Shown here piece after piece: positions 1 to 64,000 of a DNA stretch of 64,000 nucleotides; positions within the stretch are counted from its first letter, which is position 1, and each line of letters opens with the position of its first letter. This stretch comes from Octopus sinensis (Eukaryota): positions 28,458,001 to 28,522,000 of the forward strand of contig NC_043018.1 in the NCBI RefSeq assembly GCF_006345805.1. Reading direction: 5' to 3'. The position numbers were made by a program, and so were the translations under genes. The notes below the pieces were generated by a model, which saw only the letters and a program-made list of their open reading frames with translations, did no database searches and was not told the origin of the DNA.

Positions 1-291
1 TGTTGTGTTGAACTTTTCTTAAAGTTTCTATGTTGATTTCTGTTGCACGTCTGATCCCAACCTCTATGAGTTGAGCTGGGTAATGTCTGTCAATTAGGGT
101 GTTTTTGAGTTCTTGCAGTCTAAAGTTCCTGGTATTTTGTTCTGACACTATTGTACATATCCTTCTTGCAAGGTTGAAGGGGATGTTTGTTTTAGTGTGT
201 CTTGGGTGACATGAATTAAAAAGAAGGTATTGTTTGGCGTCTGTGGCTTTGTAGAAAATGTCTGTTTCTATTTTAAGGTTAATTTTTTTAA
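1..291 (-). mobile_element. Inverted segment of the adjacent Penelope-like element
   Basis: 1-291 is the reverse complement of 574-864 (no mismatch seen by eye). It joins the forward RT sequence at 291/292 and probably continues left of the window. Confidence 0.92.
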
Positions 292-1511
292 CCGGAATTG
301 CTATGGGTACAAGGGCAGCACCAGTCATTGCGAACTTAACAATGGGATACATGGAAATAATCATTTACCAGGAATCTCTATCAATCTTTGGAAACTCCCT
401 CTCTCAATACATAAAAGAGAATTGGAAACGATTCCTAGACGATTGTTTCACTCTCTGGAATGAAAACATAGATAAACTCCTAAAATTTAAAAACCTATTG
501 AACAGCATAAACCCAAATATACAGTTCACAATGGAATACAACCAAAAGGAGCTCCCGTTCTTGGATATACTAATTAAAAAAATTAACCTTAAAATAGAAA
601 CAGACATTTTCTACAAAGCCACAGACGCCAAACAATACCTTCTTTTTAATTCATGTCACCCAAGACACACTAAAACAAACATCCCCTTCAACCTTGCAAG
701 AAGGATATGTACAATAGTGTCAGAACAAAATACCAGGAACTTTAGACTGCAAGAACTCAAAAACACCCTAATTGACAGACATTACCCAGCTCAACTCATA
801 GAGGTTGGGATCAGACGTGCAACAGAAATCAACATAGAAACTTTAAGAAAAGTTCAACACAACAACACACCGTCCCCGAAAATACTACCTTACATATCTA
901 CATACAACCCCAGAAACAAAGAAGCCTTCACCATCATCACCGAGAATTTACCAATACTTCATAAAAACCCCAAATTAAAGGAAATTCTAAACATACACCA
1001 AATCATTAAAAGCTACAAACAGCCTAAATCACTTAAAAAGATTCTCACAAAGGCAAAATTGTCTTCTGAAATTACGGATGCAAAAGTAAAAAAATGTGGT
1101 AGATCGAACTGTGCAACATGTCCTAACCTATTGGAAGGATCAGAATTCTTCTTTAAAGAGGGACAGAAATTCAAGATCAAATCTAACTTTACTTGTGCCT
1201 CTGAAAACATAATTTATGTCATTAAATGCTCGGGCTGCCACCAAGACTACGTGGGTTCCACGGGACTATCACTCAGGCGTAGATGCACACTGCATCGACA
1301 ACAGATTGCATTCCCAGAATATAGAATGATACCTTTTAGTGAGCACATTGAGAAATGCGCAAAGCAACTACTGCCACAATTTTTAATCTTCCCATTTTAC
1401 CAATGTGCTTTCGGATCATCAACACAAATGAGACTGAACAAGGAAACATTCTTCATTGAAAAGTACAAACCCAGACTCAACCATCCGAACATACTGACAC
1501 AGAGAAATTAA
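258..1511 (+). CDS. 5'-truncated Penelope-like (Neptune-type) ORF: C-terminal half of RT plus GIY-YIG endonuclease
   Basis: Motifs GIAMGTRAAPVIANLTM, WKRFLDD (catalytic), FLDI, HPRHTKTNIP, CGRSNCATC, NIIYVIKCSGCHQDYVGST and H..QQI..SEH. The first 11 codons come from the inverted segment, so real homology starts at about 292. No stop codon before 1511. Confidence 0.92.
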   Translation: MSVSILRLIFLTGIAMGTRAAPVIANLTMGYMEIIIYQESLSIFGNSLSQYIKENWKRFLDDCFTLWNENIDKLLKFKNLLNSINPNIQFTMEYNQKELPFLDILIKKINLKIETDIFYKATDAKQYLLFNSCHPRHTKTNIPFNLARRICTIVSEQNTRNFRLQELKNTLIDRHYPAQLIEVGIRRATEINIETLRKVQHNNTPSPKILPYISTYNPRNKEAFTIITENLPILHKNPKLKEILNIHQIIKSYKQPKSLKKILTKAKLSSEITDAKVKKCGRSNCATCPNLLEGSEFFFKEGQKFKIKSNFTCASENIIYVIKCSGCHQDYVGSTGLSLRRRCTLHRQQIAFPEYRMIPFSEHIEKCAKQLLPQFLIFPFYQCAFGSSTQMRLNKETFFIEKYKPRLNHPNILTQRN

Positions 1512-1821
1512 CAAGGGAAAGGGGAAAAAAATTTTTAAGCGATTATCTCCCTTACACCGGAAGAAATCACTCACTACCTCCCCTTATTTAGAAATCTCCT
1601 GAAAATAAACACAACGATAACTCCATGCAATATAAACATAACGTCACAAGAAATTTGAAAAGCTACACGCGAAACCGGTAATTTCTTTAAAAATTTTAAA
1701 ATTATGTCATTTTAAGGAAAGGAAAAAAATTTTTCTAATATTCTCCAGACATTTTGACACAAATATATATATATTTTTTAACATTTAAGCCTTCTGTCGT
1801 TTTTTCACACTTTACTATTTT

Positions 1822-1823
<2 letters not shown>

Positions 1824-1871
<48 letters not shown>

Positions 1872-1878
1872 TATATAT

Positions 1879-1926
<48 letters not shown>

Positions 1927-1940
1927 TATAATATATATAT

Positions 1941-1986
<46 letters not shown>

Positions 1987-1992
1987 ATATAT
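1824..1992. repeat. (TA)n microsatellite downstream of the PLE
   Basis: Direct reading. Confidence 0.95.
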
Positions 1993-2477
1993 AATTATAT
2001 GGAATAATGAAAATTTTTCCACTTTAATAATTAGATGTTTATATTTAGAATATCTGAATGCTTTTAGAGAACCATGAAATATATAATTTATTATACAAAA
2101 ATTAAATTTTTTCTTTGAAACATTTGATACTTTATATGGTGTGAAATTCTGCATAAGTGGTACTGAATGTACAGTCTTATCAGATAACGTTTCCGAAAGA
2201 TTTTTGCATAGACTAGTCTCCTTTTCTGCCTTGAGATTTGTCATCTGATATCTGTTTACGTCAAGTTGGAAATTTTCTTAAGTATAGAACAACATCTAAT
2301 ACGGATACTGTTTATAATATTATTCTGCTACTCCAATAATTATATCCGTATTTGAATATCATTGCAAAAGTTCATATAGCTACACTTGACACCCCCCCCC
2401 CCCCGACAGTCCTAATGACTAAATTACTGAGCGGTGGAGTTTCAAAATGCAACGGTAATATAGTACAGGCATAGATG

Positions 2478-4540: not shown

Positions 4541-5525
4541 GGCGGTAAGCTGGCAGAAACGTTAGCACGCCGGGCGAAATGCTTAGCGGTATTTCGTCTG
4601 CGTTACGTTGTGAGTTCAAATTCCGCCGAGGTCGACTTTGCCTGTCATCCTTTCGGGGTCGATAAATTAAGTACCAGTTACGCACTGGGGTCGATGTAAT
4701 CGACTTAATCTGTTTGTCTGTCCTTGTTTGTCCCCTCTGTGTTTAGCCCCTTGTGGGTAATAAAGAAATAGGTATTTCATCTGCCTTTGCGTTCTGGGTT
4801 CAAATTCCGCTGTGGTCGACTTTGCCTTGCATCCTTTTGGGGTCGATAAATTAAGTACCAGTTACGCACTCGGGGCGATATAATCGACTTAATCCGTTTG
4901 TCTGTCCTTGTTTATCCTCTCTGTGTGTAGCCCCTTGTGGGTAGTAATGAAATAGGTTATTTTGTCTGCAGCTACGTTCTGAGTTCAAATTCCGGCGAGG
5001 ACGACTTTGCCTTTCATCCTTTCGGGGTCGATTAAATAAGTACCAGTTACGCACTCGGGCCGATATAATCGACTTAATCTATTTGTCTGTCTGTGTTTGT
5101 CCCCTCTGTTTGTAGCCCCTTGTGTTTAGTAAAGAAATAAAAAACTTCAGTACGCCGGGAGAAATGCTTAGCGGTATTTCGTCTGTGGTTACGGTATGTG
5201 TTCAAATGCCACCGATATCGACTTTGCTTTTCATCCTTTCGGGGTCGATTAAATAGTTACCAGTTACGCACTGGGGTCGATACAATCCACTTAATCCGTT
5301 TGTCTGTCCTTGTTTGTCCTCTCTGTGTTTGGCCCCTTGTGGGTAGTAAAGAAATAGGTATTTCGTCTGCCGTTACGTTCTTAGTTCAAATTCCGCCGAG
5401 GTCGACTTTCTTTTTCATCCTTTCAGGGTCGATTAAATAAGTACCGGTCGCGCACTGGGGTCGATCTAATCGACTGACCCCTTCCTCAAACGTTTCGGTA
5501 CTTGTACCTAGAAGAGAAAAGAATA
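4541..5525 (+). repeat. Head-to-tail array of five ~185-bp SINE family A modules
   Basis: Modules restart at GGT(A)TTT near 4588, 4771, 4956, 5172 and 5358. Each has a B-box (G[A/G/T]GTTCAAAT) and CATCCTTTCGGGGTCGA..AAGTACCAG. Confidence 0.92.
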
Positions 5526-17956: not shown

Positions 17957-18249
17957 GTCAGTGTTTATGCATATGTGAACAAATATATTTCTACACATTC
18001 ATATATGTGCAAAATGTGCCCTTGCTCACGCAATCTTACGTTCACAGACACACACAGACACACACACACACACACACAGACACACACACACACACACACA
18101 TATATATGTGTATATATATATATATATATATACATATGCATATATGTATACATATATATTGCTTAAGATTTCTTCTCATGCAAAATAACCCTCTCCTGCT
18201 TATAGACGATAGCATTCAACGTGCAACAGGGATAGATAAAAATAAATGC

Positions 18250-18495
18250 GTCCTTTTAAATCCTAGCCAGGCTCATGGGCCCGGTTTCCCGGTTTCTATG
18301 GTGTATGTGTTCCCAGCTGGACGGGACGCCAGTCTATCGTGGCGTTAGTCATTTTTGCCAGCTGAGTGGACTGGAGCAATGTAAAATGAAGTGTTTTGCT
18401 CAAGACCACAACGCGTCGCCCGGTCCACGAATCGAAACCAACGTCTTACGATTATGATGCTCACACCCTAACCACTAAGCCACGCGCCTCCACGC
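18250..18495 (-). mobile_element. SINE family C
   Basis: GGAGGCGCGTGGCTTAGTGGTTAGG head, B-box GGTTTCGATTCG, GAAACCGGGAAACCGGGCCC tail. Confidence 0.85.
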
Positions 18496-18519
18496 GAAAG
18501 AGATACCTATAGAATAATT

Positions 18520-19140
18520 TAGGGCTACACGAGAAAGACGGACCAATCAACGGAACAGAATACCACTTTCATTAACACGCAATCCGCATCATCAAAACAA
18601 ATTTGCCAATCATGAAACAAAGTGAAAAACTGAAAAAAACATATTAACTAATCAAACACTTATCTTAAGCAAAATGCAATCACATGACCTAAAGAAACTA
18701 TTAACAATGGCACAATTCAACTTGAACAAACAGGATATATAACATTCACAGTTTTCAAGTGTATTGGTAACACATGTGGAATTTACCAATACATGCATAC
18801 GGGTTGATCCATTAAAACAAAAAATGGAACAGATTTTCGCAAATGCAGATATGAACTGCAAAAGCAGAAGTTTTATCTATCGCATTAAATGCCTGAATTG
18901 CGAGGAACTATATATTGGTGAGATAGGGAATGCATTATAAGACTGCCCAGGAGTTCACGGACAACAAATCCGGAATACTAAATTTCGCCAGATTCCATTG
19001 AGTGAACATATAGATACATGTGGTCAGAAAATGTTTCTAAGTTGTCCTTTCCATAAACTACGTGACACAAGAGAAGTTGGAAGAAAGATAAAAAGGAAAA
19101 CGGTTTATTAAAATGTTCAAACCTGCTCTGAACAGAAATA
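18520..19140 (+). pseudogene. Decayed Penelope-like GIY-YIG region, related to the 258-1511 element
   Basis: MNCKSRSFIYRIKCLNCEELYIGE...HGQQIRN..FRQIPLSEHIDTCG parallels FTCASENIIYVIKC..C..DYVG...HRQQI..YRMIPFSEHIEKC. Confidence 0.8.
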
Positions 19141-27755: not shown

Positions 27756-28205
27756 CTTTTTTACGTAGGCAAAGAGAGAAACAATGGATCAACATGACTC
27801 AGATTTTTACCTATGAAGGTTATTTCAACGGACCGATCTACTTGGTAAAATTATTAATTAATTGACTGATTAATTAATTTGATTAAATAATTTTACCCTT
27901 GTATTATTAATTTGAAATTATAATTTACTCCATGATAGAATACTGTAGTTTTCTGCGGTACTGCTCGCAACATACACGTGGGTACAGGGGATGCGCACAT
28001 TCGGCTGTGTATACTTTGTAAGTCTTTGTTGCACGATGTCGCTCGATCGTGTGCATATTTAACCGTAGCACTTTCAAATTTTATTATTGGAAATGCTACA
28101 CTGAAGAGAGAAGTAAGTAATTAAGCACTTTAATCTCGAAATGCGTCTGTAGCTCATCAGAGTCGAGTTGATTCGTTGTTTTTCTCTTTGCCTACGTAAA
28201 AAAAG
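27756..28205. mobile_element. MITE-like element with ~47-bp imperfect inverted termini
   Basis: 27756-27803 versus the reverse complement of 28157-28205, about 6 mismatches. No clear TSD. Confidence 0.6.
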
Positions 28206-30146: not shown

Positions 30147-30206
30147 GCATGTATGTATGCATATATATATATATATATATATATAAATATGAATAAATAA
30201 ATAAAT

Positions 30207-30800
30207 GGAGTTGAACGAAGATGTTAATAAAATTATTTTACTTTCGACATATGCTTCGAAGACAACATGGTTTTATTTTAAAGGAATAAACGGTGTAAAA
30301 TGCAATCTTCTCATCAACAACAAGACATTATAACAGTTACGATGACTGCCTACATGATAAACAGAAAGTCATTAAGTATTTTAAAAAACCGTTAGTAAAT
30401 TTGACGTCAAAGGCAGATAGGAGGACGAGAAGGGTTAAAGGAATAATAAGTACAGAACAAATAGAGAGGGATACGTTGATTTAAAAAACGTTCAAAGGCT
30501 TAGAAATAGACTTCTCTATTGAAGTAAAGTGCAAGTTAAACTAACTGTTCAAACTATAAAGACTGGCGAAATCACTTATATGAGTAAAATGTATGTTTCT
30601 GCCAGTGTTAACATTTGTACGATTTCTCTGTAAGTGAATATAAAAGAGTTCAGAGTTGCAAATGTTACAAAATCTCTTGCCCTTATCGAAAGGAAAGGAT
30701 ACGGGCAGTATGAAGCAATCTAACTTAAAATCTTTATTGTTGTCTTTAAGATGCCAAACCAATTTACTTAGCTCTGTACTATGGCGTGTTTTGCTAGCCC
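30207..30800 (-). mobile_element. 3' fragment of the PLE family seen at 60165-62049
   Basis: VWHLKDNNKDFKLDCFILPVSFPFDKGKRFCNICNSELFYI matches VWRLKDNNITFKLD*SILSVSFPFNKGRKFCGISNSELFYI. The terminal ~130 nt align with 61915-62042. Confidence 0.88.
30236..30330 (-). ncRNA. Degenerate type I hammerhead ribozyme (probably inactive)
   Basis: uUGAUGA-GAAGAU...GUCUUC-GAAgC-AUAU-GUC-GAAAG. Two core substitutions (C3U, A15.1G) and a mutated stem I. Confidence 0.7.
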
Positions 30801-37479: not shown

Positions 37480-38245
37480 GTTTAGCCCCTTATGGGTAGT
37501 AAAGAAATAGAAATAGATATTTCTTCTACCGCTACGTTCTGAGTTCAAATTCCGCTGAGGTCAACTTTGCCTTTCACCCTTTCGGGGATACGCACTAGGC
37601 TCGATGTAATCGACTTAATCCCTTAGTCTGTCCGTGTTTGTCGCTGAGCGAAATGCTTAGAGATATTTCGTCTGTCGTTACGTTCTGAGTTCAAATTCTG
37701 CCGAGGTCAACTTTACTTTTCGTCATTTCGGGGTCGATAAATTAAGTTCCATTTACGCACTGGAGTTGATGTAATCGACTTAATCTCTTTGTCTGTCCTT
37801 GTTTGTCCTCTCTATGTTTAGCCCCTTGATGGCAATAGAGAAATAAGAAACATTATCACGCCGGGCGAAATGCTTAGCGGTATTTCGTCTGCCGTTATGT
37901 TCTGAGTTCAAATTCCGCCGAGGTCGACTTTACCTTTCGTCCTTTCGGGGTCGATAAACTAAGTTCCAGTTACTTACTGGGGCCGATCTAATCGACTGGC
38001 CCCCTCCCCCAAAATTTCGGGCCTTGTGCCTAAAGGAGAAAAAGAACCGTTACACGCCGGGCAAAAGTCTTAACGGCATTTTGTTCGTCTTTACGTTCAG
38101 AGTTCAAATGCCGCCAGGGTCGACTTTGCCTTCTATCCTTCGGGATCAATGAAATAAGTACCTGTTGAGCATTGGAGTCGATGTATTCGACTTACACCCT
38201 CCACCGAAATCAATGGCCTTGTGCCAAGATTTGAAACCAATATTT
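37480..38245 (+). repeat. Second head-to-tail array of SINE family A modules (about four)
   Basis: Repeated GAGTTCAAAT..GCC.AGG.TC.ACTTT modules. Confidence 0.88.
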
Positions 38246-51653: not shown

Positions 51654-54600
51654 TTTTTTTTTTTTTTTTTTTTAAGTTAAATTAAAATACATGAGCAGCA
51701 ACAGTTCTCACATCGACAATGCTCTTCTCAATACGTGTGATGTGCCAGTTAAGACAATCTTTTGCACTTCTTGCAGGGATGGTAAGCCAGGGATCATTCT
51801 CATATAATTTTCGGTTCCCTTCTTGATCATTCCTAGTGCTCCTACGATCACTGGTATTGTTACCGCCTTGAGATGCCACATTTTCTCAATTTCAATGAGT
51901 AGGTCTTTATATTTTCTGAGCTTGTCAAACTCTTTCGCTGAGATATTATGATCACAGGGGATGCTCATGTCGATCAATAAGCAAACTTTATTGTTTTGGT
52001 CTTTCACAACAATATGGTTTATTGGCCTTGATGGTTCGGTCTGTATGTACTGGAAAGTCCCACAGAATGGTTACATTTTCTCCTTCAGTTACAGCCTCAG
52101 GGTGGTGATTATACCACTTGTCGGCAGTTTTGATATTGTAATGCCGACTTATTAGCCAGTGGAGATATTGGCAAACTCTGTCATGTCTTAATTTATACTC
52201 CACTGGTGCTAAAACTTTACATCCAGAGATTAGGTGGTCCACTGTTTCAATCATGTCGTTGCAGAATCGGCATTTTGGGTCTGCTCCATTTTTCATCACA
52301 TTGGCCTGGTAGTTCCGGGTTAATAGGCTTTGATCTTGAGCAGCCAGGATGAAACCTTCGTTCTTGCTTTTAGCCCTGAGCTCCGCATCCACTGATGGGT
52401 TTGCTTCTGGTCAACATCAGCTTGTTTGCTGCGGGTCACATATTTGCCGTGCAGAGGTTTCTCCTCCCACCTATCAGCCAATTGCTCGTGCGCTTTTTTC
52501 ATTGCCATCATTTTAACCTTCTTTGCAACAATAGTTGCCGTACTTCCCTCGGGTTGTTCAGTTTGGGTATCCTACACGAGATCAATAGCAAATTTTTTGC
52601 TTTCTTGATGATAGAATGAAGCTTCTTTCGTCTCTCGTGATTTTCCACGAGCTTTAGCATCCAGTCATTCGATATTTCGAGATATTTGGCCAGTCCAATT
52701 GTGGTTGTTTTGTAAGCTATTCAAATTGGATCAGGCCTCGACCTCCTGGGCTCTGGGAAGGTAAAGGCGATCTACGTCTGCCTTTGGGTGGTGCATCCTA
52801 TTACAACTCAGCAGCTTGCGTATTTTTCTATCTATATTCTTTACTTCACTCATATTCCAGTTCAACACATTGTAGCTATAAGTAACAACTGGAACTGCTA
52901 AGGAATTTATAGCTAACACCTTGTTACGTGCATTTAGTTCAGATTTCAGGACTGCACGAACTCTCCTATAACATTCCTTCCTGATTTTCTCTTTCATGCT
53001 TGCATGCTGAATACCAGAGCCTTCATTTATCCCTAAATATTTGTATGTCTGTTCTTGCTCAAGCTCTCTTATGACTGTGTCAACATCTAACACGACTGAA
53101 TTTGTGGTCTTCACTTTCCCTTTCTGGAAAGTGGCCTTGGCACACTTCTCAAGTCCAAACTCCATCCCGATGTCATCGCTGAATGCTTTCACGGTGCGCA
53201 ATAGGCCTTCAAGTTCATTATTGTCTTTACCATGAAGTTTTAAGTCATCCATATAAATAGATGGCTTATTTTTTTATTGGCAATTTTATACCATACCCTG
53301 TTCTGTTTAATTCACTTGTAACGGGTATTAGGGCTATGCAGAATATTAAAGGTGAAAGTGAGTCACCTTGAAAAATTCCACAGTTGATGTTTATATTTTC
53401 TGAGGCAAGTACTCCATTAGAGTGGTATAATTGGAGATTCGTATTCCACAACGACATATTGTGCTTCAGGAAGTTTGAAATCACAGGGGAAATTTTAAAG
53501 ATGTCCAGCGATCTCAAGATCCATGGATGCGGTATACTGTCGAAGGCCTTTTTATAGTCAATCCATGCGGTGCTGAGATTTCTGCGATGTTCTGTGGACA
53601 GTTCTCAAGGATCATACGATGATTAGCAGTTGATCTTTGCATCCGTAAGAGCCTCGGCGGCACCCTTTTTGTTCAATGGGGAAAATATCGTTCTTCTCCA
53701 TGAATGCATATGTTTTCTCCGCCAGGATAGATGTTAGGATTTTTTATACGTGGTGGATAGACAGGTTATAGGCCGATAGTTTTTTGGAAGGTTGGTTTCG
53801 TTATTCTTTGGGAGTAGGTAAGTAATGCCACTTGCTAACCATTCAGGTGTTTTCTTGGGTCTCTCAAAATTCCAGTGAGCAGCTGAACTAGCTTACCGTG
53901 TGCGCACGGGAGCGATGCGAGCCAGAAATTCGGCACCCTATCTTTACCGGGGGATTCCAATTATGGGCCTTCGTGTGTGCCTTTCTTAGGTCTGCTATTG
54001 TGATGTCTTCCCATGCTTGTTGTTGTAAATTTTGGTAGGATCCTTCAGTTTGTATAATCCAGTCTGCATTTATGTTGTACGTCTTCTTGTCACTCCAAAT
54101 CCTTTCCCAAAGTTTTGAACTTCTTCCATGGGAGGGGGGTCTTTAACGGTTACTTTCTCCTTCCCTATTTCTCGTAGAATTTTTTGGCATTGGATGTGAA
54201 CAGCTTATTTTGCTTGTAAAACTTGTTTCTCTTCTCAAATCTTCGTATTCTTTGGGCTTTTGCTTGGACTTGTTTGTTTCAGCGTTTCTTTTATTGATAT
54301 CAGTTCTTCTCTTGGTGAGGATCAAATTTTCTCTTCATCTTTCTTCCTGTTCTGGATCTTACATTTCCACATATTAGTTCATTTAATATTGATATTTCCC
54401 CTCTCATAAATTCAATCTTTTTCAATTTTACTTCTCCAGGTTTGATTTCTTCCCAGGTTTTGTTTTCTTTGTTTTTTCGGGGGAATACAGCTGGTTTCAA
54501 TTGCCCTAGCAGAAGCGTAAATAATTTCATTTAACTCAGTAAAATCAGGTTTTAATTCTCGTATTATTTCATTTGTTACGTAGTTGCCAATTTGGATTTG

Positions 54601-55405
54601 TTTTTTTATTTTGGTTTGTATTTGAGAGTTTATGAAGCGGTTCTCTATCATTCATACTTGTATGTCTTACAACTTCAAGCGTATTCAGGATTTTCTGCCT
54701 CATTTCTGCCATAGACTCTCTGTGTTCTTCAGCAAATGCGAGATCTTCAGTTACTGTTGTTTTTTTGTTTTCCTGGCTATCTTTAACAGGTACAATAGAA
54801 TTTCTTGTATCTTCAGGCCTTTGCGTACTTTGGTCAGATGGCAGTCTTTCAATTAAGCCTCGTGGCGGGCTATACTGTTCATCTGATTCTTCATTTCCTT
54901 TGTGTCTTATATTTATGTCATTTTCCGTTGCGTGCTTGATCGCACTTATTTCACTGTGTGTGAGTCTGTTATTTCTAAAGATATCCCTCCTCACATTTGC
55001 TAATTCGTTCTCGTCCAAATAGGGCCTACTGTCTTGATTCCGTATTCTCCATATACTGTAAGAGTTTGCGGTGTGTCTCTCTTGAGATGGCCTACCTAAT
55101 GCATAGTAATAAGCGTATATTACTTCTTTATACTCTTCTCGGGTCCATTTGTTCCGCTTACATTTTTCTTTCTGTGGTGGTTGTGGTGGTGAACTTGGAG
55201 GGCTCGAGTTGGGGGATTTCCCGTTCAAGTGACCATCCATGTCCGTATTCGGAGAAGAGTTTGTGCCAGTTGATGACTTTTCGATCCCAGGCTGGCTCTT
55301 CCCTGGGGGACGCGCTTCCAGATTAACCATAGGACAAGCGATTTGGTATACTGATTTAGTTTTCCTTTTAGTTTCCAAAAACATTTTGGTGCTACGATAA
55401 TGTTA
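51654..55405 (-). mobile_element. Near full-length R4/Dong-clade non-LTR retrotransposon (RT plus restriction-like endonuclease), disrupted
   Basis: N-terminus KRNKWTREEYKEVIYAYY. RT motifs HNWKSPGKD, NYRPITCL, QKGCRRGSYGCKDQL, WIDYKKAFDS, GIFQGDSLSPL, YMDDLKL. CCHC knuckle CRFC..ETVDHLISGC. RLE motifs RHD, ANKP, LLIDMSIP..EFDKLRKY. A20 tail at 51654-51673. Possible TSD TCATTTTTT; the 5' boundary is uncertain. Confidence 0.95.
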
Positions 55406-60164: not shown

Positions 60165-60890
60165 CATCTTTAACAAAAAAGCTGAATTTTATAACGCCGC
60201 CTTGTCAAAAGCCGGTTATAGAAATAAATATCATACATCGACCCAGCCCATTCTAATGCAATATATATTTCCCAGAATAAGAAAACTAATAACAATAGAA
60301 ATAGTGAGAATAATGGCTTTAGTTCTAACTACGTCGGCACCTCTGTACATAAGAGAAATAATTTACGGACCTGAGGTGGCAATCAAAACCCAACCCCAAA
60401 TTTACACCACAGAAATTTTCCCTTTACTGTGAATAGTAACACTATGAGCAATTTTAAATCTACAAAAAACTCTATCTGGTTTGTTATACTTTTCGGAAAA
60501 CAAATCAAATCGAACCTTCCTTTACATTTCCGTGAAGCCGTGGCTAGGAACTTTCCCAGGAATTCTAGGTATTATTCTATTATAAATTCACATAAGGTGA
60601 GAATTGCATTCTCTAACACTAGAAATATTTCGCAAATCATCGCTTCCCATAATAACAAGCTGCTAAACAAATATTCTTCACCCGGAAGATCCAACACTAT
60701 TCTTATCAATTCCAACCAAACATACAATAATAATAATAGAAATAGTATTGATAGTAGCAACATTCGTAGCAACGTTAGTGTTAGCAATGATAGTATTAAT
60801 AATAGCATTGGTCGGGTTAATAACAATGGTAGTGTTGATGGTATCAACAACAACATTTCTATTGCCAGGAATATTGCCGGTTGTAATACA

Positions 60891-60931
<41 letters not shown>

Positions 60932-62049
60932 TAATAGAAATAGTGTACTGGTTAGTACTAGCAGTAATATAAACAGCAATCATATCAATAATAACTCAGT
61001 CTTGATCTCGGAAGTAAACCCTAACAGATTAAGGTTCTTGTCCAGTAACTCCAAAATTAAAAATTCCATTTACCAATGTAGAATTTCTACCGGTACCGAT
61101 GTCTTCTTCTATATTGGTGCAACAACTTCCATATTATCCCAGAGAATTTCTAATCATTATTCAACGTTCCGAGATAAGAGAAAACAACAAAGTACAGGAC
61201 TAAGTAAATTAGTTTGGCGTCTTAAGGACAACAATATAACTTTCAAGCTAGATTAGTCCATATTGTCTGTATCCTTTCCTTTTAATAAGGGCAGGAAATT
61301 TTGCGGAATTTCTAATTCCGAGCTCTTCTATATCATTTTCGCCAAGTTCCCCTTGGTTAACACATTAATAGAAAAATCCTATAAGTGTAAGCACTGGCAA
61401 AAACACACTTTCCATTCATATAAATGATAAATAATATAGATAGCTTCTCTGTTTTAGTAATTAATTTCACGTCTCTTTTATGCCTACTCCGTTACATAAA
61501 ACAATAATACTAAATGTCACTGGCGTATGTTTATCTCTTCTTCTCTACCTCTCCCTCTCCCTCGCCTCTCTATCTCTGTCATACGCTCAATCAAACACAC
61601 AGACACCAATTTCTCACCTTACTGCTATATTTATTTGACAACTGTCCCCAACACACACATATACATAGACATAAATGCAGTTATATACACACACTCATAC
61701 ACACACATAAGCAATAAAACTCATTAACCAGAGCAAACACCCCCGCATCCACATACATACAGCATGCATACTGTCCCCTTCTTATTTTCATAACTTCCTC
61801 TTCCAAACAATTTTGACGTCATTGCTTATAACGGATTTTTAAAAACACTCATTATCACTGTGAACACCATGTAGGAAGCCATAAAAAAGTTTTTGTCCGT
61901 CGTGAGGCTGATAGAGATTCCTTGTCTTTCCTGATGAGAAGACGGCATAATGCACCCTTTATTCCTTCGGAATTAAGAATATGCAGTCTTCGAAACATGT
62001 GTTGAAAGTAAAGGAATTTTGTTAAAATCTTCGTTCGACTCCATTCTTT
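60165..62049 (+). mobile_element. 5'-truncated Penelope-like element (probably Naiad-type): RT thumb, GIY-YIG, 3' UTR with hammerhead
   Basis: FNKKAEFYNAALSKAGY, IWF...KQIKSN...NFP..YSIIN.HKVRIAFS.TRNISQIIASHNNKLL, SIYQC..FFYIGATT..QRISNH..F..STGLSKLVW.LK, C..SNSE, CKH. Clade assignment is from recall and needs a phylogeny. Confidence 0.88.
61918..62016 (+). ncRNA. Type I hammerhead ribozyme at the PLE 3' end
   Basis: Stem I UUCCUU-gu-CUUUC / GAAAG-ua-AAGGAA. CUGAUGA at 61931-37. Stem II GAAGAC/GUCUUC. GAAA at 61992-95. Stem III AC-augu-GU (palindromic ACAUGU). Triplet GUU, predicted cut after 62003. Confidence 0.88.
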
Positions 62050-62233
62050 CATATGAACACACACGTGTGTATATATATATTATATATGTGTACGTAAATA
62101 TGTGTGTGTGCATGTATGTAAGTATGCGTATATGTATGTATTTAACTTTCTTTTTATGTATATATCCCTCTCTCTCTGTATGTATATCTATGTGTGTGTA
62201 TGTATATATATATATATATATATACATATACAC

Positions 62234-62295
<62 letters not shown>

Positions 62296-62468
62296 GTATA
62301 TATATTATATATACATACACACACATAGATATACATACAGAGAGAGAGAGGGATATATACATAAAAAGAAACTTAAATACATACATATACGCATACTTAC
62401 ATACATGCACACACACATATTTACGTACACATATATAATATATATATACACATGTGTGTGTTCATATG
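62050..62468. repeat. ~419-bp palindrome with ~165-bp arms around a (TA)n-rich centre
   Basis: The arms match through non-repetitive words (GTACGTAAATATG, GTAAGTATGCG, TTTCTTTTTATG, ATATCCCTCTC) with 2 substitutions and a dinucleotide slip. Confidence 0.92.
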
Positions 62469-62980
62469 TTTAAACGGATATAAATTCAGTTTTAACACAC
62501 AGTAACAGATCATGTGAAATGTTAGACAAGTGCAATTCCTAAATATTAATTGATTGCATTTCCCAGAGAAATGTTGATTGAAAAATGAAATCTACTTTTT
62601 ATTGAATCAAGTGTCCGTTTTTTTCTTTTAATTTTAAAACTTTAAAACATTTTTCTAATGGTAATAAAAACTTTTGTTCAATGATTGCTAAAATTGAAGA
62701 TGTTATGACATTAAAAGTGAAAAGAATTAATATGCATTCCTGCTATATACATCATAATTCGTTGTACTCTATGCACAAGGACTTAAATTCTGCAGGAGTT
62801 TCATCGATATTATCGACTCCGTTGCTCAACAGGTTTTTTTTGTGTCGACACTGAAAGGATGAAATGCAAAGTATAACTCGGCGGAATTTGAACTCAAATC
62901 GTAAAGCCCAACAGAGGTAGTCTAGCGGTGGTGGTGGTGGACAAACAAAACAAAGATACAATGACCTACATATGCACACA

Positions 62981-63014
<34 letters not shown>

Positions 63015-63231
63015 ATCAATATAGGGTGGCAAAAAATTTCGTAGAATTTATTTGCCACCAGCGGCCTAGTGGGAAAAAATTAAATAGTCATAGACCATTT
63101 ATAAGTTCAACATCACAATCAAGGAATGGCCATAATAGGCCATTCACCCACTAGAAATAACAGCCAAAGCTTCAACCGCAAAATAACAATAATTCCGCAA
63201 ACCAGGAGAAAATTAAAAAAAAACATTTACC

Positions 63232-63345
63232 CTGTAATTTCTTATACGATGCACCGTTTCATCTATTGTTTAATGGTAAACTAACCTGATTAAATTAAAT
63301 CAAGCCAATCTTCCATAGGCCGATAGATTCGTCAGTAAGTAACAG
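63232..63345 (-). ncRNA. Type I hammerhead ribozyme (inverted copy)
   Basis: Same core as 63517-63630 with one mismatch in stem I (UUACUUA). Predicted cut after minus-strand base 63245. Confidence 0.85.
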
Positions 63346-63516
63346 CCAGATCCGAGCAGATATTATCACGAGGCACCTCTATCCCTGCCTCGGCAATATC
63401 TGACCTAAAATTTTCAAATCATCGCACTCGCGCCAAATTTATCGGCAGCAAATATAAGCCGCCGATTCCCGAGGCAGGGATAGAGGTGCCTCGTGATAAT
63501 ATCTGCTCGGATCTGG

Positions 63517-63630
63517 CTGTTTCTTACTGACGAATCTATCGGCCTATGGAAGATTGGCTTGATTTAATTTAATCAGGTTAGTTTACCATTAAACAATAGA
63601 TGAAACGGTGCATCGTATAAGAAATTACAG
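63517..63630 (+). ncRNA. Type I hammerhead ribozyme
   Basis: Stem I UUUCUUA (63520-26) / UAAGAAA (63618-24), plus CUG/CAG beyond a UUA bulge. CUGACGA at 63527-33. Stem II AUCUAU/AUAGAU. GAAA at 63602-05. Stem III ACG(G)-ugca-(U)CGU. Triplet GUA, predicted cut after 63617. Confidence 0.93.
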
Positions 63631-64000
63631 GGTAAATGTTTTTTTTAATTTTCTCCTGGTTTCCGGAATTAATGATATTTTGCGGTTGAAGCTTTGGCTG
63701 TTATTTCTAGTGGGTGAATGGCCTATTATGGCCATTCCTTGATTGTGATGTTGAACTTATAAATGGTCTATGACTATTTAATTTTTTCCCACTAGGCCGC
63801 TGGTGGCAAATAAATTCTAGGAAATTTTTTGCCACCCTATATTGATTAATTATGAATTTTCTGGTTAATTCCGTAATGGAATCGGCGGCTTATATTTGCT
63901 GCCGATAAATTTGGCGCGAGTGCGATGATTTGAAAATTTTAGGTCAGATATTGCCGAGGCAGGGATAGAGGTGCCTCGTGATAATATCTGCTCGGATCTG

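What the first reader, a model, noticed from the sequence alone, without database searches (positions are those of the whole stretch)
63012..64000. Candidate cephalopod retrozyme: a 485-nt non-coding, highly structured unit with a self-cleaving hammerhead
Seen: the sequence starting CGAGGCAGGGATAGAGG at 63470 recurs exactly at 63955 (period 485). The unit holds a complete type I hammerhead with every core nucleotide and all three stems intact. The rest folds into many local helices: ATCGGCGGC/GCTGCCGAT, CAGATATT/AATATCTG enclosing CGAGGCA/TGCCTCG, GGTGGCAAA/TTTGCCACC, CTAGTGGG/CCCACTAG enclosing GAATGGCC/GGCCATTC and AAATGGTC/GACTATTT. It has no ORF. Known: tandem type I hammerhead repeats (Schistosoma SM-alpha, newt satellite 2, Dolichopoda pDo500, metazoan non-LTR retrozymes) are cut into monomers that can circularise. 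Inference: this is a mobile ribozyme-processed circular RNA family. I do not recall one described from cephalopods, but I could not check novelty.
Basis: partly seen in the sequence, partly recalled or inferred. Interest (0 to 1): 0.92.

Follow-up and report, generated by a model that had tools for sequence, protein, structure and literature searches.

The report
Octopus hammerhead repeat, inserted head-to-head
The last kilobase of this Octopus window holds two outward-facing partial copies of a 485-bp non-coding, strongly folded repeat with a complete but atypical hammerhead ribozyme motif, most likely an ordinary retrozyme-type mobile element put in by Penelope-like retrotransposon machinery.

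Summary
A 485-nt unit (63470-63954) restarts exactly at 63955. It carries a type I hammerhead motif with every core nucleotide, cut site 63617/63618. The named helices exist, and no reading frame exceeds 60 codons. It reads unit positions 409-485 then 1-384 on the minus strand and ends in an (AT)14 microsatellite. The locus is therefore a head-to-head pair, with only 1.09 units visible in plus orientation.

A genuine Penelope-like element (PLE) at 1-1511 in the same window has the same architecture and also ends in (TA)n. The host is Octopus: a LINE ORF is 92-98% identical to O. vulgaris proteins.

Rfam hammerhead models do not detect the motif. It has a 56-nt insert in helix II and A-U at positions 10.1-11.1. 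My descriptor found nothing as good in 200 shuffles of the window.

Best reading: a non-autonomous hammerhead repeat (non-LTR retrozyme type) mobilised PLE-style. Cleavage, circular RNA and copy number are untested, and no other copy could be retrieved. This is a new member of a known kind, of moderate interest.

The parts
62984..63011 (.). (AT)14 microsatellite at the outer (3') end of the inverted arm; presumed integration target
   Evidence: Tandem Repeats Finder. Homology to the unit stops at about 63012.
63008..63392 (-). Inverted arm, part 2: unit positions 1-384 on the minus strand, 98.2% identical to the plus copy (7 differences)
   Evidence: BLASTN; repeats; differences listed.
63393..63469 (-). 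Inverted arm, part 1: unit positions 409-485 on the minus strand, 100% identical. It continues without a break into unit position 1, giving a second sighting of the 485-to-1 join.
63237..63343 (-). Hammerhead copy in the inverted arm (core starts at 63335, A17 at 63245). Helix I is interrupted by an A-A mismatch from the change at 63340.
63469..63470 (.). Head-to-head junction of the two 5'-truncated arms. ATTCC|CGAGG here resembles the normal unit join ATTGC|CGAGG at 63950-63959 (microhomology).
63470..63954 (+). Reference 485-nt unit: 37.3% G+C, no ORF, strongly self-paired
63519..63625 (+). Type I hammerhead motif: helix I 63519-26/63618-25, core CUGACGA 63527-33, helix II 63534-63601 (6-bp base plus branched 56-nt insert), GAA 63602-04, helix III 63605-16
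   Evidence: Descriptor scan and shuffles. Constrained fold is 2.1 kcal/mol above the MFE. No Rfam hit.
63617..63618 (+). Predicted self-cleavage site, GUA|U
   Evidence: Position of H17 in the motif; cleavage itself not tested.
63605..63616 (+). Helix III segment ACGGUGCAUCGU. It is self-complementary over 12 nt, so two units in one transcript could form a double hammerhead.
   Evidence: Self-duplex -17.5 kcal/mol against -0.2 for the hairpin alone.
63955..64000 (+). First 46 nt of the next unit, identical to 63470-63515; the array runs off the window

Best explanation
This is one insertion of a non-autonomous, hammerhead-bearing 485-bp repeat of the metazoan non-LTR retrozyme kind, in an Octopus genome. 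It carries the integration scars of Penelope-like element (PLE) machinery.

Shown:
- There are two arms with their 3' ends pointing outwards and their 5'-truncated ends joined head-to-head at 63469/63470.
- The left arm ends in (AT)14.
- Both arms contain the join of unit position 485 to position 1. The copied template was therefore already longer than one unit, or circular.
- The sense strand of each arm carries a type I hammerhead with a full catalytic core.
- A real RT + GIY-YIG PLE in the same window has the same two-arm architecture and also ends in (TA)n.

Inferred life cycle:
1. The array is transcribed into a multimeric RNA.
2. Hammerheads cut at GUA|U (63617/63618). They probably act as pairs through the 12-nt self-complementary helix III.
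3. [quoted passage not shown] In the predicted fold of that circle, helices I and III of the hammerhead are masked.
4. A PLE reverse transcriptase primes on a nicked (TA)n target at the AU-rich stretch around unit position 380.
5. It copies round the circle or multimer.
6. A second priming event or template switch produces the opposite arm.
7. The two cDNA ends are joined at a short microhomology.
For: - Period 485 and the inverted arm.
- The 485-to-1 join appears in both arms.
- (AT)14 at the arm's 3' end.
- The hammerhead has a complete core. A match as good occurred in 0 of 200 shuffled windows, and the descriptor found nothing in 62 kb of other Octopus DNA.
- The hammerhead fold lies within 2.1 kcal/mol of the MFE, and helices I and II are in the MFE itself.
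- Helix III is palindromic, with a -17.5 kcal/mol self-duplex.
- The unit is 37% G+C, non-coding, and folds with z near -6.8.
- PLE ORF 258-1511 contains RT and GIY-YIG domains.
- That PLE has an inverted arm 1-291 that is 100% complementary to 574-864, with the plus copy starting near 292. Its 3' end runs into (TA)n.
- Literature: PLE insertions are partial tandems, often with an adjacent inverted 5'-truncated copy, and show a microsatellite target bias (PMC8557442).
- Literature: non-LTR retrozymes are low-GC tandem repeats with type I hammerheads, found in molluscs alongside PLEs (PMC7229834).
- Literature: vertebrate retrozymes are related to PLE pLTRs (bioRxiv 10.64898/2026.07.22.740005).
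Against: - Only 1.09 tandem units are visible, and the array length is unknown.
- No other copy turned up anywhere: not in the rest of the window, not in 62 kb of O. vulgaris DNA, not in two metagenome scans or one prokaryote-genome scan, and not through protein look-ups of its frames.
- Rfam hammerhead models do not match.
- Pair 10.1-11.1 is A-U, where natural hammerheads nearly always have G-C (PMC4209133).
- Helix II carries a 56-nt insert, so the usual loop 1 / loop 2 contacts are not recognisable.
- The unit (485 nt) is longer than the 170-400 nt described for the family.
- The two copies differ at 7 sites, none compensatory, so there is no covariation support.
- Outward-facing inverted arms can also arise by LINE twin priming, and a LINE lies in the window.
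Confidence: 0.6

Rival explanations
1. The 485-nt sequence is part of the pseudo-LTR or UTR of an autonomous PLE whose ORF lies to the right of the window. The hammerhead would then be a PLE hammerhead and not a separate non-autonomous element.
For: - The architecture is PLE-type: an inverted 5'-truncated copy and a (TA)n boundary.
- PLEs are present in the window.
- PLE pLTRs carry type I hammerheads.
- The window ends 46 nt into the second unit.
Against: - The sequence restarts after only 485 nt, and the same 485-to-1 join is present in the inverted arm. That leaves no room for a 2-3 kb ORF within a unit.
- There is no DNA similarity to the PLE copies in the window, and no PLE-like translation in 56-62 kb by HMM.
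- Metazoan PLE hammerheads are minimal forms lacking helix III. This one has a 4-bp helix III with a loop.
Confidence: 0.12
2. It is an ordinary local duplication or satellite with an inverted segment. The hammerhead-like motif is inactive or fortuitous, and no RNA processing or mobility is involved.
For: - There is no Rfam hit, even in a 141-nt search.
- Pair 10.1-11.1 is A-U, and helix II has a large insert.
- One of the two copies has a helix I mismatch.
- No other copies were found.
Against: - All core nucleotides and three helices are present. Chance expectation is 0.02 per window for the relaxed descriptor, and 0 of 200 shuffles were as good.
- Helix III is palindromic, as is typical of animal hammerheads.
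- Two further independent hammerhead motifs occur in the same window, where about 0.003 or fewer are expected.
- The arms have element-like ends: a microsatellite boundary and 5' truncations.
Confidence: 0.15
3. It is a retrozyme-type repeat, but mobilised by a LINE through twin priming rather than by a PLE.
For: - Twin priming by LINE-1 is known to give an inverted 5' segment joined to a direct 3' segment at microhomology (established knowledge, not tested here).
- A LINE with ORF1 and an RT fragment lies at about 51.9-55.4 kb.
Against: - Neither visible end has a poly(A) or LINE-type tail.
- The boundary is (TA)n, as for the PLE at 1-2000.
- That PLE shows the same duplicated, outward-facing arms.
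- Hammerheads are a PLE hallmark, not a LINE hallmark.
Confidence: 0.08
4. It is an assembly or sequencing fold-back artefact that created a false inverted repeat.
For: Inverted duplications near repeats are a known assembly error, and PLE-type insertions are noted to trouble assemblies.
Against: - The arms are not a perfect palindrome about the junction.
- They are offset: unit position 409 faces unit position 1.
- They differ at 7 sites including an indel.
Confidence: 0.05

Closest known systems
Metazoan non-LTR retrozymes, e.g. the 350-390-bp repeats of the mussel Mytilus galloprovincialis (Cervera & de la Pena 2020, PMC7229834)
   Same: - Type I hammerhead inside a short, low-GC, non-coding repeat.
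- The unit's end joins its own start.
- A strongly self-paired monomer is predicted.
- The host is a mollusc that also carries autonomous PLEs.
- The mussel hammerheads also lack the archetypal loop 1 / loop 2 nucleotides.
   Different: - The unit is 485 nt, against the 170-400 nt described.
- Helix II carries a 56-nt branched insert.
- Pair 10.1-11.1 is A-U.
- Helix III is 4 bp, not 1-2 bp.
- Only 1.09 units are visible.
- An inverted 5'-truncated arm is attached, which the retrozyme papers I read do not mention.
- Expression as circular RNA is unknown.
Penelope-like element insertions and their pLTR hammerheads (Cervera & de la Pena 2014, PMC4209133; Craig et al. 2021, PMC8557442)
   Same: - Partial tandem plus an adjacent inverted 5'-truncated copy.
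- A microsatellite (TA)n boundary.
- A type I hammerhead with a longer-than-usual helix II base (6 bp) and a palindromic helix III.
- Pairs of hammerheads 100-700 bp apart on opposite strands are reported for Schistosoma.
   Different: - No RT/GIY-YIG ORF, and the repeat period is only 485 nt.
- The hammerhead is not the minimal form without helix III.
- The G10.1-C11.1 pair, conserved in PLE hammerheads, is A-U here.
Classical hammerhead satellites: newt satellite 2, Schistosoma SM-alpha, Dolichopoda pDo500 (cited)
   Same: Tandem genomic repeats with a type I hammerhead whose weak, palindromic helix III favours cleavage as a double hammerhead in multimeric transcripts.
   Different: - I found no sequence similarity and did not test for it against these satellites.
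- Those hammerheads have a 4-bp helix II with a small loop and conserved loop-loop contacts.
- They form long arrays.
LINE-1 twin-priming inversions (from my own knowledge)
   Same: An inverted 5' part joined to a direct part at a short microhomology, with both parts 5'-truncated.
   Different: - Twin priming does not duplicate the same template segment in both arms.
- It leaves a poly(A) tail. Here the visible end is (AT)n.

Membership tests
Hammerhead ribozyme, type I | Conserved core C3 U4 G5 A6 N7 G8 A9 / G12 A13 A14 / A15.1-U16.1 / H17 not G | tested here: met
   CUGACGA 63527-33, GAA 63602-04, A63605-U63616, A63617.
Hammerhead ribozyme, type I | Three helices around the core, with helix I open | tested here: met
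   Helix I is 8 bp, helix II 6 bp plus an extension, and helix III 4 bp. Helices II and III are closed and helix I is open. In 200 shuffled windows, 0 matches were as good.
Hammerhead ribozyme, type I | Match to a curated covariance model (the Rfam hammerhead families) | tested here: not met
   No hammerhead hit at gathering score or at E<=10, even when only 141 nt were searched. The 56-nt helix II insert is a likely reason, but I did not test that.
Hammerhead ribozyme, type I | G10.1-C11.1 pair at the base of helix II | tested here: not met
   A63534-U63601. This pair is described as highly conserved.
Hammerhead ribozyme, type I | Site-specific self-cleavage | not testable with these tools
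   Needs in vitro transcription of a monomer and a dimer.
Metazoan non-LTR retrozyme | Head-to-tail tandem repeat, from dimer to large multimer, with a monomer of about 170-400 bp | tested here: inconclusive
   Period is 485. There are 1.09 units in plus orientation and 0.95 unit in minus orientation, and the 485-to-1 join is seen in both arms. The window ends at 64000.
Metazoan non-LTR retrozyme | Low G+C (<45%) and non-coding | tested here: met
   G+C is 37.3%. The longest stop-free frame is 60 codons, with no convincing homologue.
Metazoan non-LTR retrozyme | Monomer predicted to form a highly self-paired circle | tested here: met
   Circular MFE is -146.9 kcal/mol, 62% of bases are paired, and z = -6.8 against 100 shuffles.
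Metazoan non-LTR retrozyme | Many dispersed genomic copies | tested here: inconclusive
   There is no other copy in the 64-kb window or in 62 kb of O. vulgaris DNA. The Octopus genome itself could not be searched by DNA.
Metazoan non-LTR retrozyme | Expressed as linear and circular monomer RNA | not testable with these tools
   No transcriptome search by nucleotide sequence was available.
Metazoan non-LTR retrozyme | Co-existence with autonomous PLEs | tested here: met
   There is a PLE ORF at 258-1511 and a remnant at 18169-19099. A 99% identical copy occurs in a Logan assembly.
Autonomous Penelope-like element (pLTR) | RT + GIY-YIG ORF between the repeats | tested here: inconclusive
   None lies within the unit or to its left, and the 485-nt period leaves no room for one. 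The right flank lies outside the window.
Autonomous Penelope-like element (pLTR) | Insertion as a partial tandem with an inverted 5'-truncated copy, at a microsatellite | tested here: met
   The PLE at 1-2000 shows the same pattern. The feature is described.

The most novel reading that the evidence does not exclude
Octopus carries a retrozyme family whose hammerhead lies outside current covariance models. It has A10.1-U11.1, a roughly 68-nt branched helix II, and a 12-nt self-complementary helix III. Its genomic scars match those of the co-resident PLE: outward-facing 5'-truncated arms joined at a microhomology, a (TA)n target, and the unit join copied in both arms. That would be direct structural evidence that PLE machinery integrates a circular or multimeric retrozyme RNA. 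So far this step has been inferred only from co-occurrence and pLTR similarity.
Probability: 0.3. Interest if true: 0.6.

Novelty: new member of a known kind. Interest (0 to 1): 0.38.

Why it matters
Hammerhead-bearing tandem repeats that yield abundant circular RNAs are known from cnidarians, mussels, other invertebrates and amphibians. One in a cephalopod would extend the list rather than open a new category.

Two aspects could be useful if they hold up:
- **A detection gap.** The hammerhead escapes Rfam models because of a long helix II insert. Two further motifs in this window share a larger-than-canonical helix II. Surveys based on those models may therefore undercount such ribozymes in cephalopods.
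- **An insertion scar.** This retrozyme-like insertion preserves the same scar as a true PLE 62 kb away. Few loci allow the proposed PLE-mediated integration of retrozyme RNA to be examined directly.

Tried and rejected
- **Rfam.** I searched the whole window at gathering score, and then 62900-64000, 63500-63640 and 61880-62050 at E<=10. No ribozyme family matched. The microRNA-family hits at 63357-63505 are artefacts of the inverted repeat.
- **Looking for other copies.**
  - Two exact-pattern scans of metagenome contigs and one of prokaryote genome contigs returned 0 hits.
  - Exact look-up of six ORF translations of the unit found none on record.
  - A word-based homologue search with the 60-aa frame found no candidate.
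  - A full HMMER search of 1.84 billion representatives gave one weak hit, P0173. It is a 432-aa tandem-repeat product from an unnamed ENA contig, 39% identical over 27 residues repeated six times. I judge it a chance match to another satellite.
- **Extending the window to the right.** I looked up window ORFs in the assemblies, but neither ORF tried is on record. None of 52 Octopus LINE-like proteins maps at 100% to the window.
- **Sampling other Octopus DNA.** Two O. vulgaris loci (61 kb) contained no copy of the unit and no hammerhead descriptor hits.
- **A misreading of mine.** I first read the end of ORF 60429-61256 as a GIY-YIG domain, which would have tied the second hammerhead to a PLE. 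Pfam at E<=10, tblastn with PLE proteins and a PLE profile HMM all fail to support this, so I rejected it.
- **Bacterial-type promoter/terminator and tRNA scans.** Nothing relevant.
- **Run accession SRR9105617.** It is not mentioned in any searchable paper.

Full report
**What is in the sequence**

The 485-nt stretch 63470-63954 (the unit) restarts exactly at 63955 and runs to the window end at 64000. That gives 46 identical bases, or 51 with one mismatch if the 5 upstream bases are counted.

Read on the minus strand from 63469 leftwards, it gives unit positions 409-485 (100% identical). It then continues without a break into unit positions 1-384 (98.2% identical; six substitutions and one extra T). 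Homology stops at about 63012, inside or next to an (AT)14 microsatellite at 62984-63011.

The locus is therefore a head-to-head pair. Its two arms have their 3' ends pointing outwards, and their 5'-truncated inner ends meet at 63469/63470. The junction reads ATTCC|CGAGG. The normal unit-to-unit join reads ATTGC|CGAGG, so the arms meet at a short microhomology.

The arms are offset: unit position 409 faces unit position 1. They also differ at seven sites. A fold-back assembly artefact is therefore unlikely.

The join of unit position 485 to position 1 is present in both arms. Whatever was copied was already longer than one unit, or circular. Only 1.09 units are visible in plus orientation, and Tandem Repeats Finder reports no 485-nt array.

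**The hammerhead**

Its parts are:

| Element | Coordinates | Sequence or size |
|---|---|---|
| Helix I | 63519-63526 / 63618-63625 | GUUUCUUA / UAAGAAAU, 8 bp |
| Core | 63527-63533 | CUGACGA |
| Helix II | 63534-63539 / 63596-63601 | AUCUAU / AUAGAU, closing a 56-nt imperfect hairpin |
| GAA | 63602-63604 | GAA |
| Helix III | 63605-63616 | ACGG-UGCA-UCGU |
| A17 | 63617 | cut predicted at 63617/63618 |

- **Statistics.** I wrote a hammerhead descriptor and ran it on the window and on dinucleotide shuffles of it. A relaxed version gives 0.02 hits per shuffled window, and none of 200 shuffles gave a match as good as this one. The same descriptor found nothing in 62 kb of other Octopus DNA.
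- **Folding.** Folded alone, the 124-nt segment has helices I and II in its minimum-energy structure. The full hammerhead fold lies 2.1 kcal/mol above that structure.
- **Helix III.** The 12-nt helix III segment is self-complementary. Its self-duplex scores -17.5 kcal/mol, against -0.2 for the hairpin alone. This is the arrangement that lets animal hammerheads act as pairs in multimeric transcripts.

There are also points against it:
- No Rfam hammerhead model matches, at gathering score or at E<=10, even when only 141 nt are searched.
- The pair at the base of helix II is A-U, where natural hammerheads almost always have G-C.
- The long helix II insert means the usual loop-loop contacts cannot be recognised.
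- The inverted copy has a T-to-A change that puts an A-A mismatch in helix I.
- None of the seven differences between the copies is compensatory, so there is no covariation evidence.

**The rest of the unit**

- It is 37.3% G+C.
- Its longest stop-free frame is 60 codons, and its longest ORF with a start codon is 44 aa.
- Neither frame has a credible homologue.
- It folds much better than shuffles in either polarity (z = -5.3 and -6.8).
- The monomer that cleavage would release folds, as a circle, to -146.9 kcal/mol with 62% of bases paired and z = -6.8.
- In that fold the cleavage-site strand pairs with 63921-63927, so helices I and III of the hammerhead are masked. This is a prediction only.
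- Rfam finds no ribozyme on the opposite polarity.

**Surroundings**

The window comes from an Octopus. A LINE-type ORF at 54572-55384 (minus strand) is 92-98% identical to many Octopus vulgaris proteins on chromosome-scale records.

The window begins inside a Penelope-like element (PLE). ORF 258-1511 covers the C-terminal part of the reverse transcriptase, a CxxC linker and the GIY-YIG nuclease. This PLE has the same architecture as the hammerhead repeat:
- An inverted arm at 1-291 is 100% complementary to 574-864.
- The plus copy starts near 292.
- Its 3' end runs into a long (TA)n tract near 1790-2000.

Craig et al. describe exactly this for PLEs: partial tandems, often with an inverted 5'-truncated copy next to them, and a bias for microsatellite targets (PMC8557442). 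Cervera and de la Pena also noted pairs of hammerheads 100-700 bp apart on opposite strands in Schistosoma.

**Interpretation**

The best reading is a non-autonomous hammerhead repeat of the metazoan non-LTR retrozyme kind, integrated by PLE-type machinery.

- **Shown:** the two-arm architecture, the microsatellite boundary, the unit join in both arms, the full hammerhead core on the sense strand of each arm, and the parallel with a real PLE in the same window.
- **Inferred:** transcription of the array, cleavage at GUA|U (probably as a double hammerhead), ligation of the 485-nt monomer into a circle by a host ligase, target-primed reverse transcription from a nicked (TA)n at the AU-rich stretch near unit position 380, copying round a circular or multimeric template, and a second priming or template switch that makes the opposite arm.

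Both inner ends lie at the 5' base of strong hairpins (unit positions 1-24 and 412-437). This may mean the polymerase stopped there, but two cases prove nothing.

**Rivals**

| Rival | Main evidence against | Weight |
|---|---|---|
| A pLTR of a coding PLE continuing to the right | Cannot be excluded because the window ends. The 485-nt period, seen in both arms, leaves no room for an ORF, and the hammerhead is not the minimal PLE form. | 0.12 |
| A fortuitous or dead motif in an ordinary duplication | The shuffle statistics and the palindromic helix III. | 0.15 |
| LINE twin priming | There is no poly(A); the boundary is (TA)n. | 0.08 |
| An assembly artefact | The arms are offset and have diverged. 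| 0.05 |

**Comparison with what is known**

Non-LTR retrozymes are defined as low-GC, non-coding tandem repeats of about 170-400 bp with a type I hammerhead. They are expressed as highly paired circular RNAs and co-exist with PLEs. They are documented in a coral, a mussel and the axolotl, and seen by bioinformatics in many invertebrate phyla (PMC7229834). A 2026 preprint argues from vertebrate data that they derive from PLE pLTRs.

Here the features fall out as follows:
- **Met:** hammerhead type, G+C content, lack of coding, predicted structure and PLE co-existence.
- **Inconclusive:** array size and copy number.
- **Untestable here:** expression.

Against the described family, this case differs in four ways:
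- a longer unit
- a large helix II insert
- A-U at positions 10.1-11.1
- the attached inverted arm, which the retrozyme papers I read do not mention

My literature searches found no description of a hammerhead repeat or retrozyme in cephalopods. The library is incomplete, so this is a weak negative.

**Verdict**

This is a real feature, described correctly in part. It is most likely a new member of a known kind. Interest is moderate (0.38). The decisive tests are a nucleotide search of the Octopus genome, the sequence to the right of the window, and cleavage and circular-RNA assays. None of these could be run here.

Noticed in passing
window 1-2000: A 5'-truncated Penelope-like element. ORF 258-1511 holds RT, a CxxC linker and GIY-YIG. 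An inverted arm at 1-291 is 100% complementary to 574-864, and the 3' end runs into (TA)n at about 1790-2000. A 99% identical copy sits on a Logan contig (SRR9105617, L001). The best named relative is from Argonauta hians, at 53% identity.
   Followed up: yes
window 1648-1687: The 3' UTR of that PLE holds a minimal hammerhead-like string: AAGAAAU-UUGAAAA-GCUACACGC-GAAA-CCGG-UA-AUUUCUU. It has a 7-bp helix I, a palindromic ACCGGU in place of helix III, and the U3-A8 core variant reported for Schistosoma PLEs (PMC4209133). Helix II is only 2 bp. I did not test its significance, so it may be chance.
   Followed up: partly
window 61926-62008 and 30204-30316 (minus strand): A second, independent type I hammerhead motif. 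It has core CUGAUGA at 61931-37, helix II GAAGAC/GUCUUC with a 42-nt insert, G10.1-C11.1, a 2-bp helix III, and a predicted cut at 62003/62004. A match at least as good occurred in 0 of 300 shuffles, and Rfam gives no hit. An 80% identical, decayed copy (C3U, A15.1G) lies at 30204-30316. Homology between the two starts at the core, as expected for 5'-truncated element tails.
   Followed up: partly
window 28095-28153, with 27757-27804 / 28156-28203: A third hammerhead motif. It has core CUGAAGA at 28101-07, a 6-bp helix I, a 4-bp helix II with a 22-nt loop, a 1-bp helix III capped by UGCG, and a predicted cut after C28147. Expectation is 0.003 per shuffled window. It sits between 48-nt inverted repeats (87.5% identical), with an (AT)n tract at or before 27671 to the left of the left repeat.
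   Followed up: partly
window 62050-62468: A large imperfect palindrome of microsatellite-like sequence, with 163-nt arms that are 93% complementary and 93 nt apart. It lies between the second hammerhead and the finding.
   Followed up: no
window about 51900-55400 (minus strand): A LINE-type retroelement. Its 271-aa ORF1-like product is 92-98% identical to many Octopus vulgaris 'hypothetical predicted proteins', several of them apparently chimeric gene models. Downstream are a weak RVT_1 fragment at 52731-53252 and a cysteine-rich tail ORF at 51988-52392.
   Followed up: partly
window 18169-19099 (plus strand): A remnant of another Penelope-like element, covering the linker and GIY-YIG part at 32-43% identity to mollusc PLE proteins.
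   Followed up: no
window 62804-62907 and at least 15 other places (e.g. 4600-5473, 37533-38182): A roughly 100-nt dispersed repeat, 70-85% identical between copies and SINE-like in its distribution. One copy lies just left of the finding.
   Followed up: no
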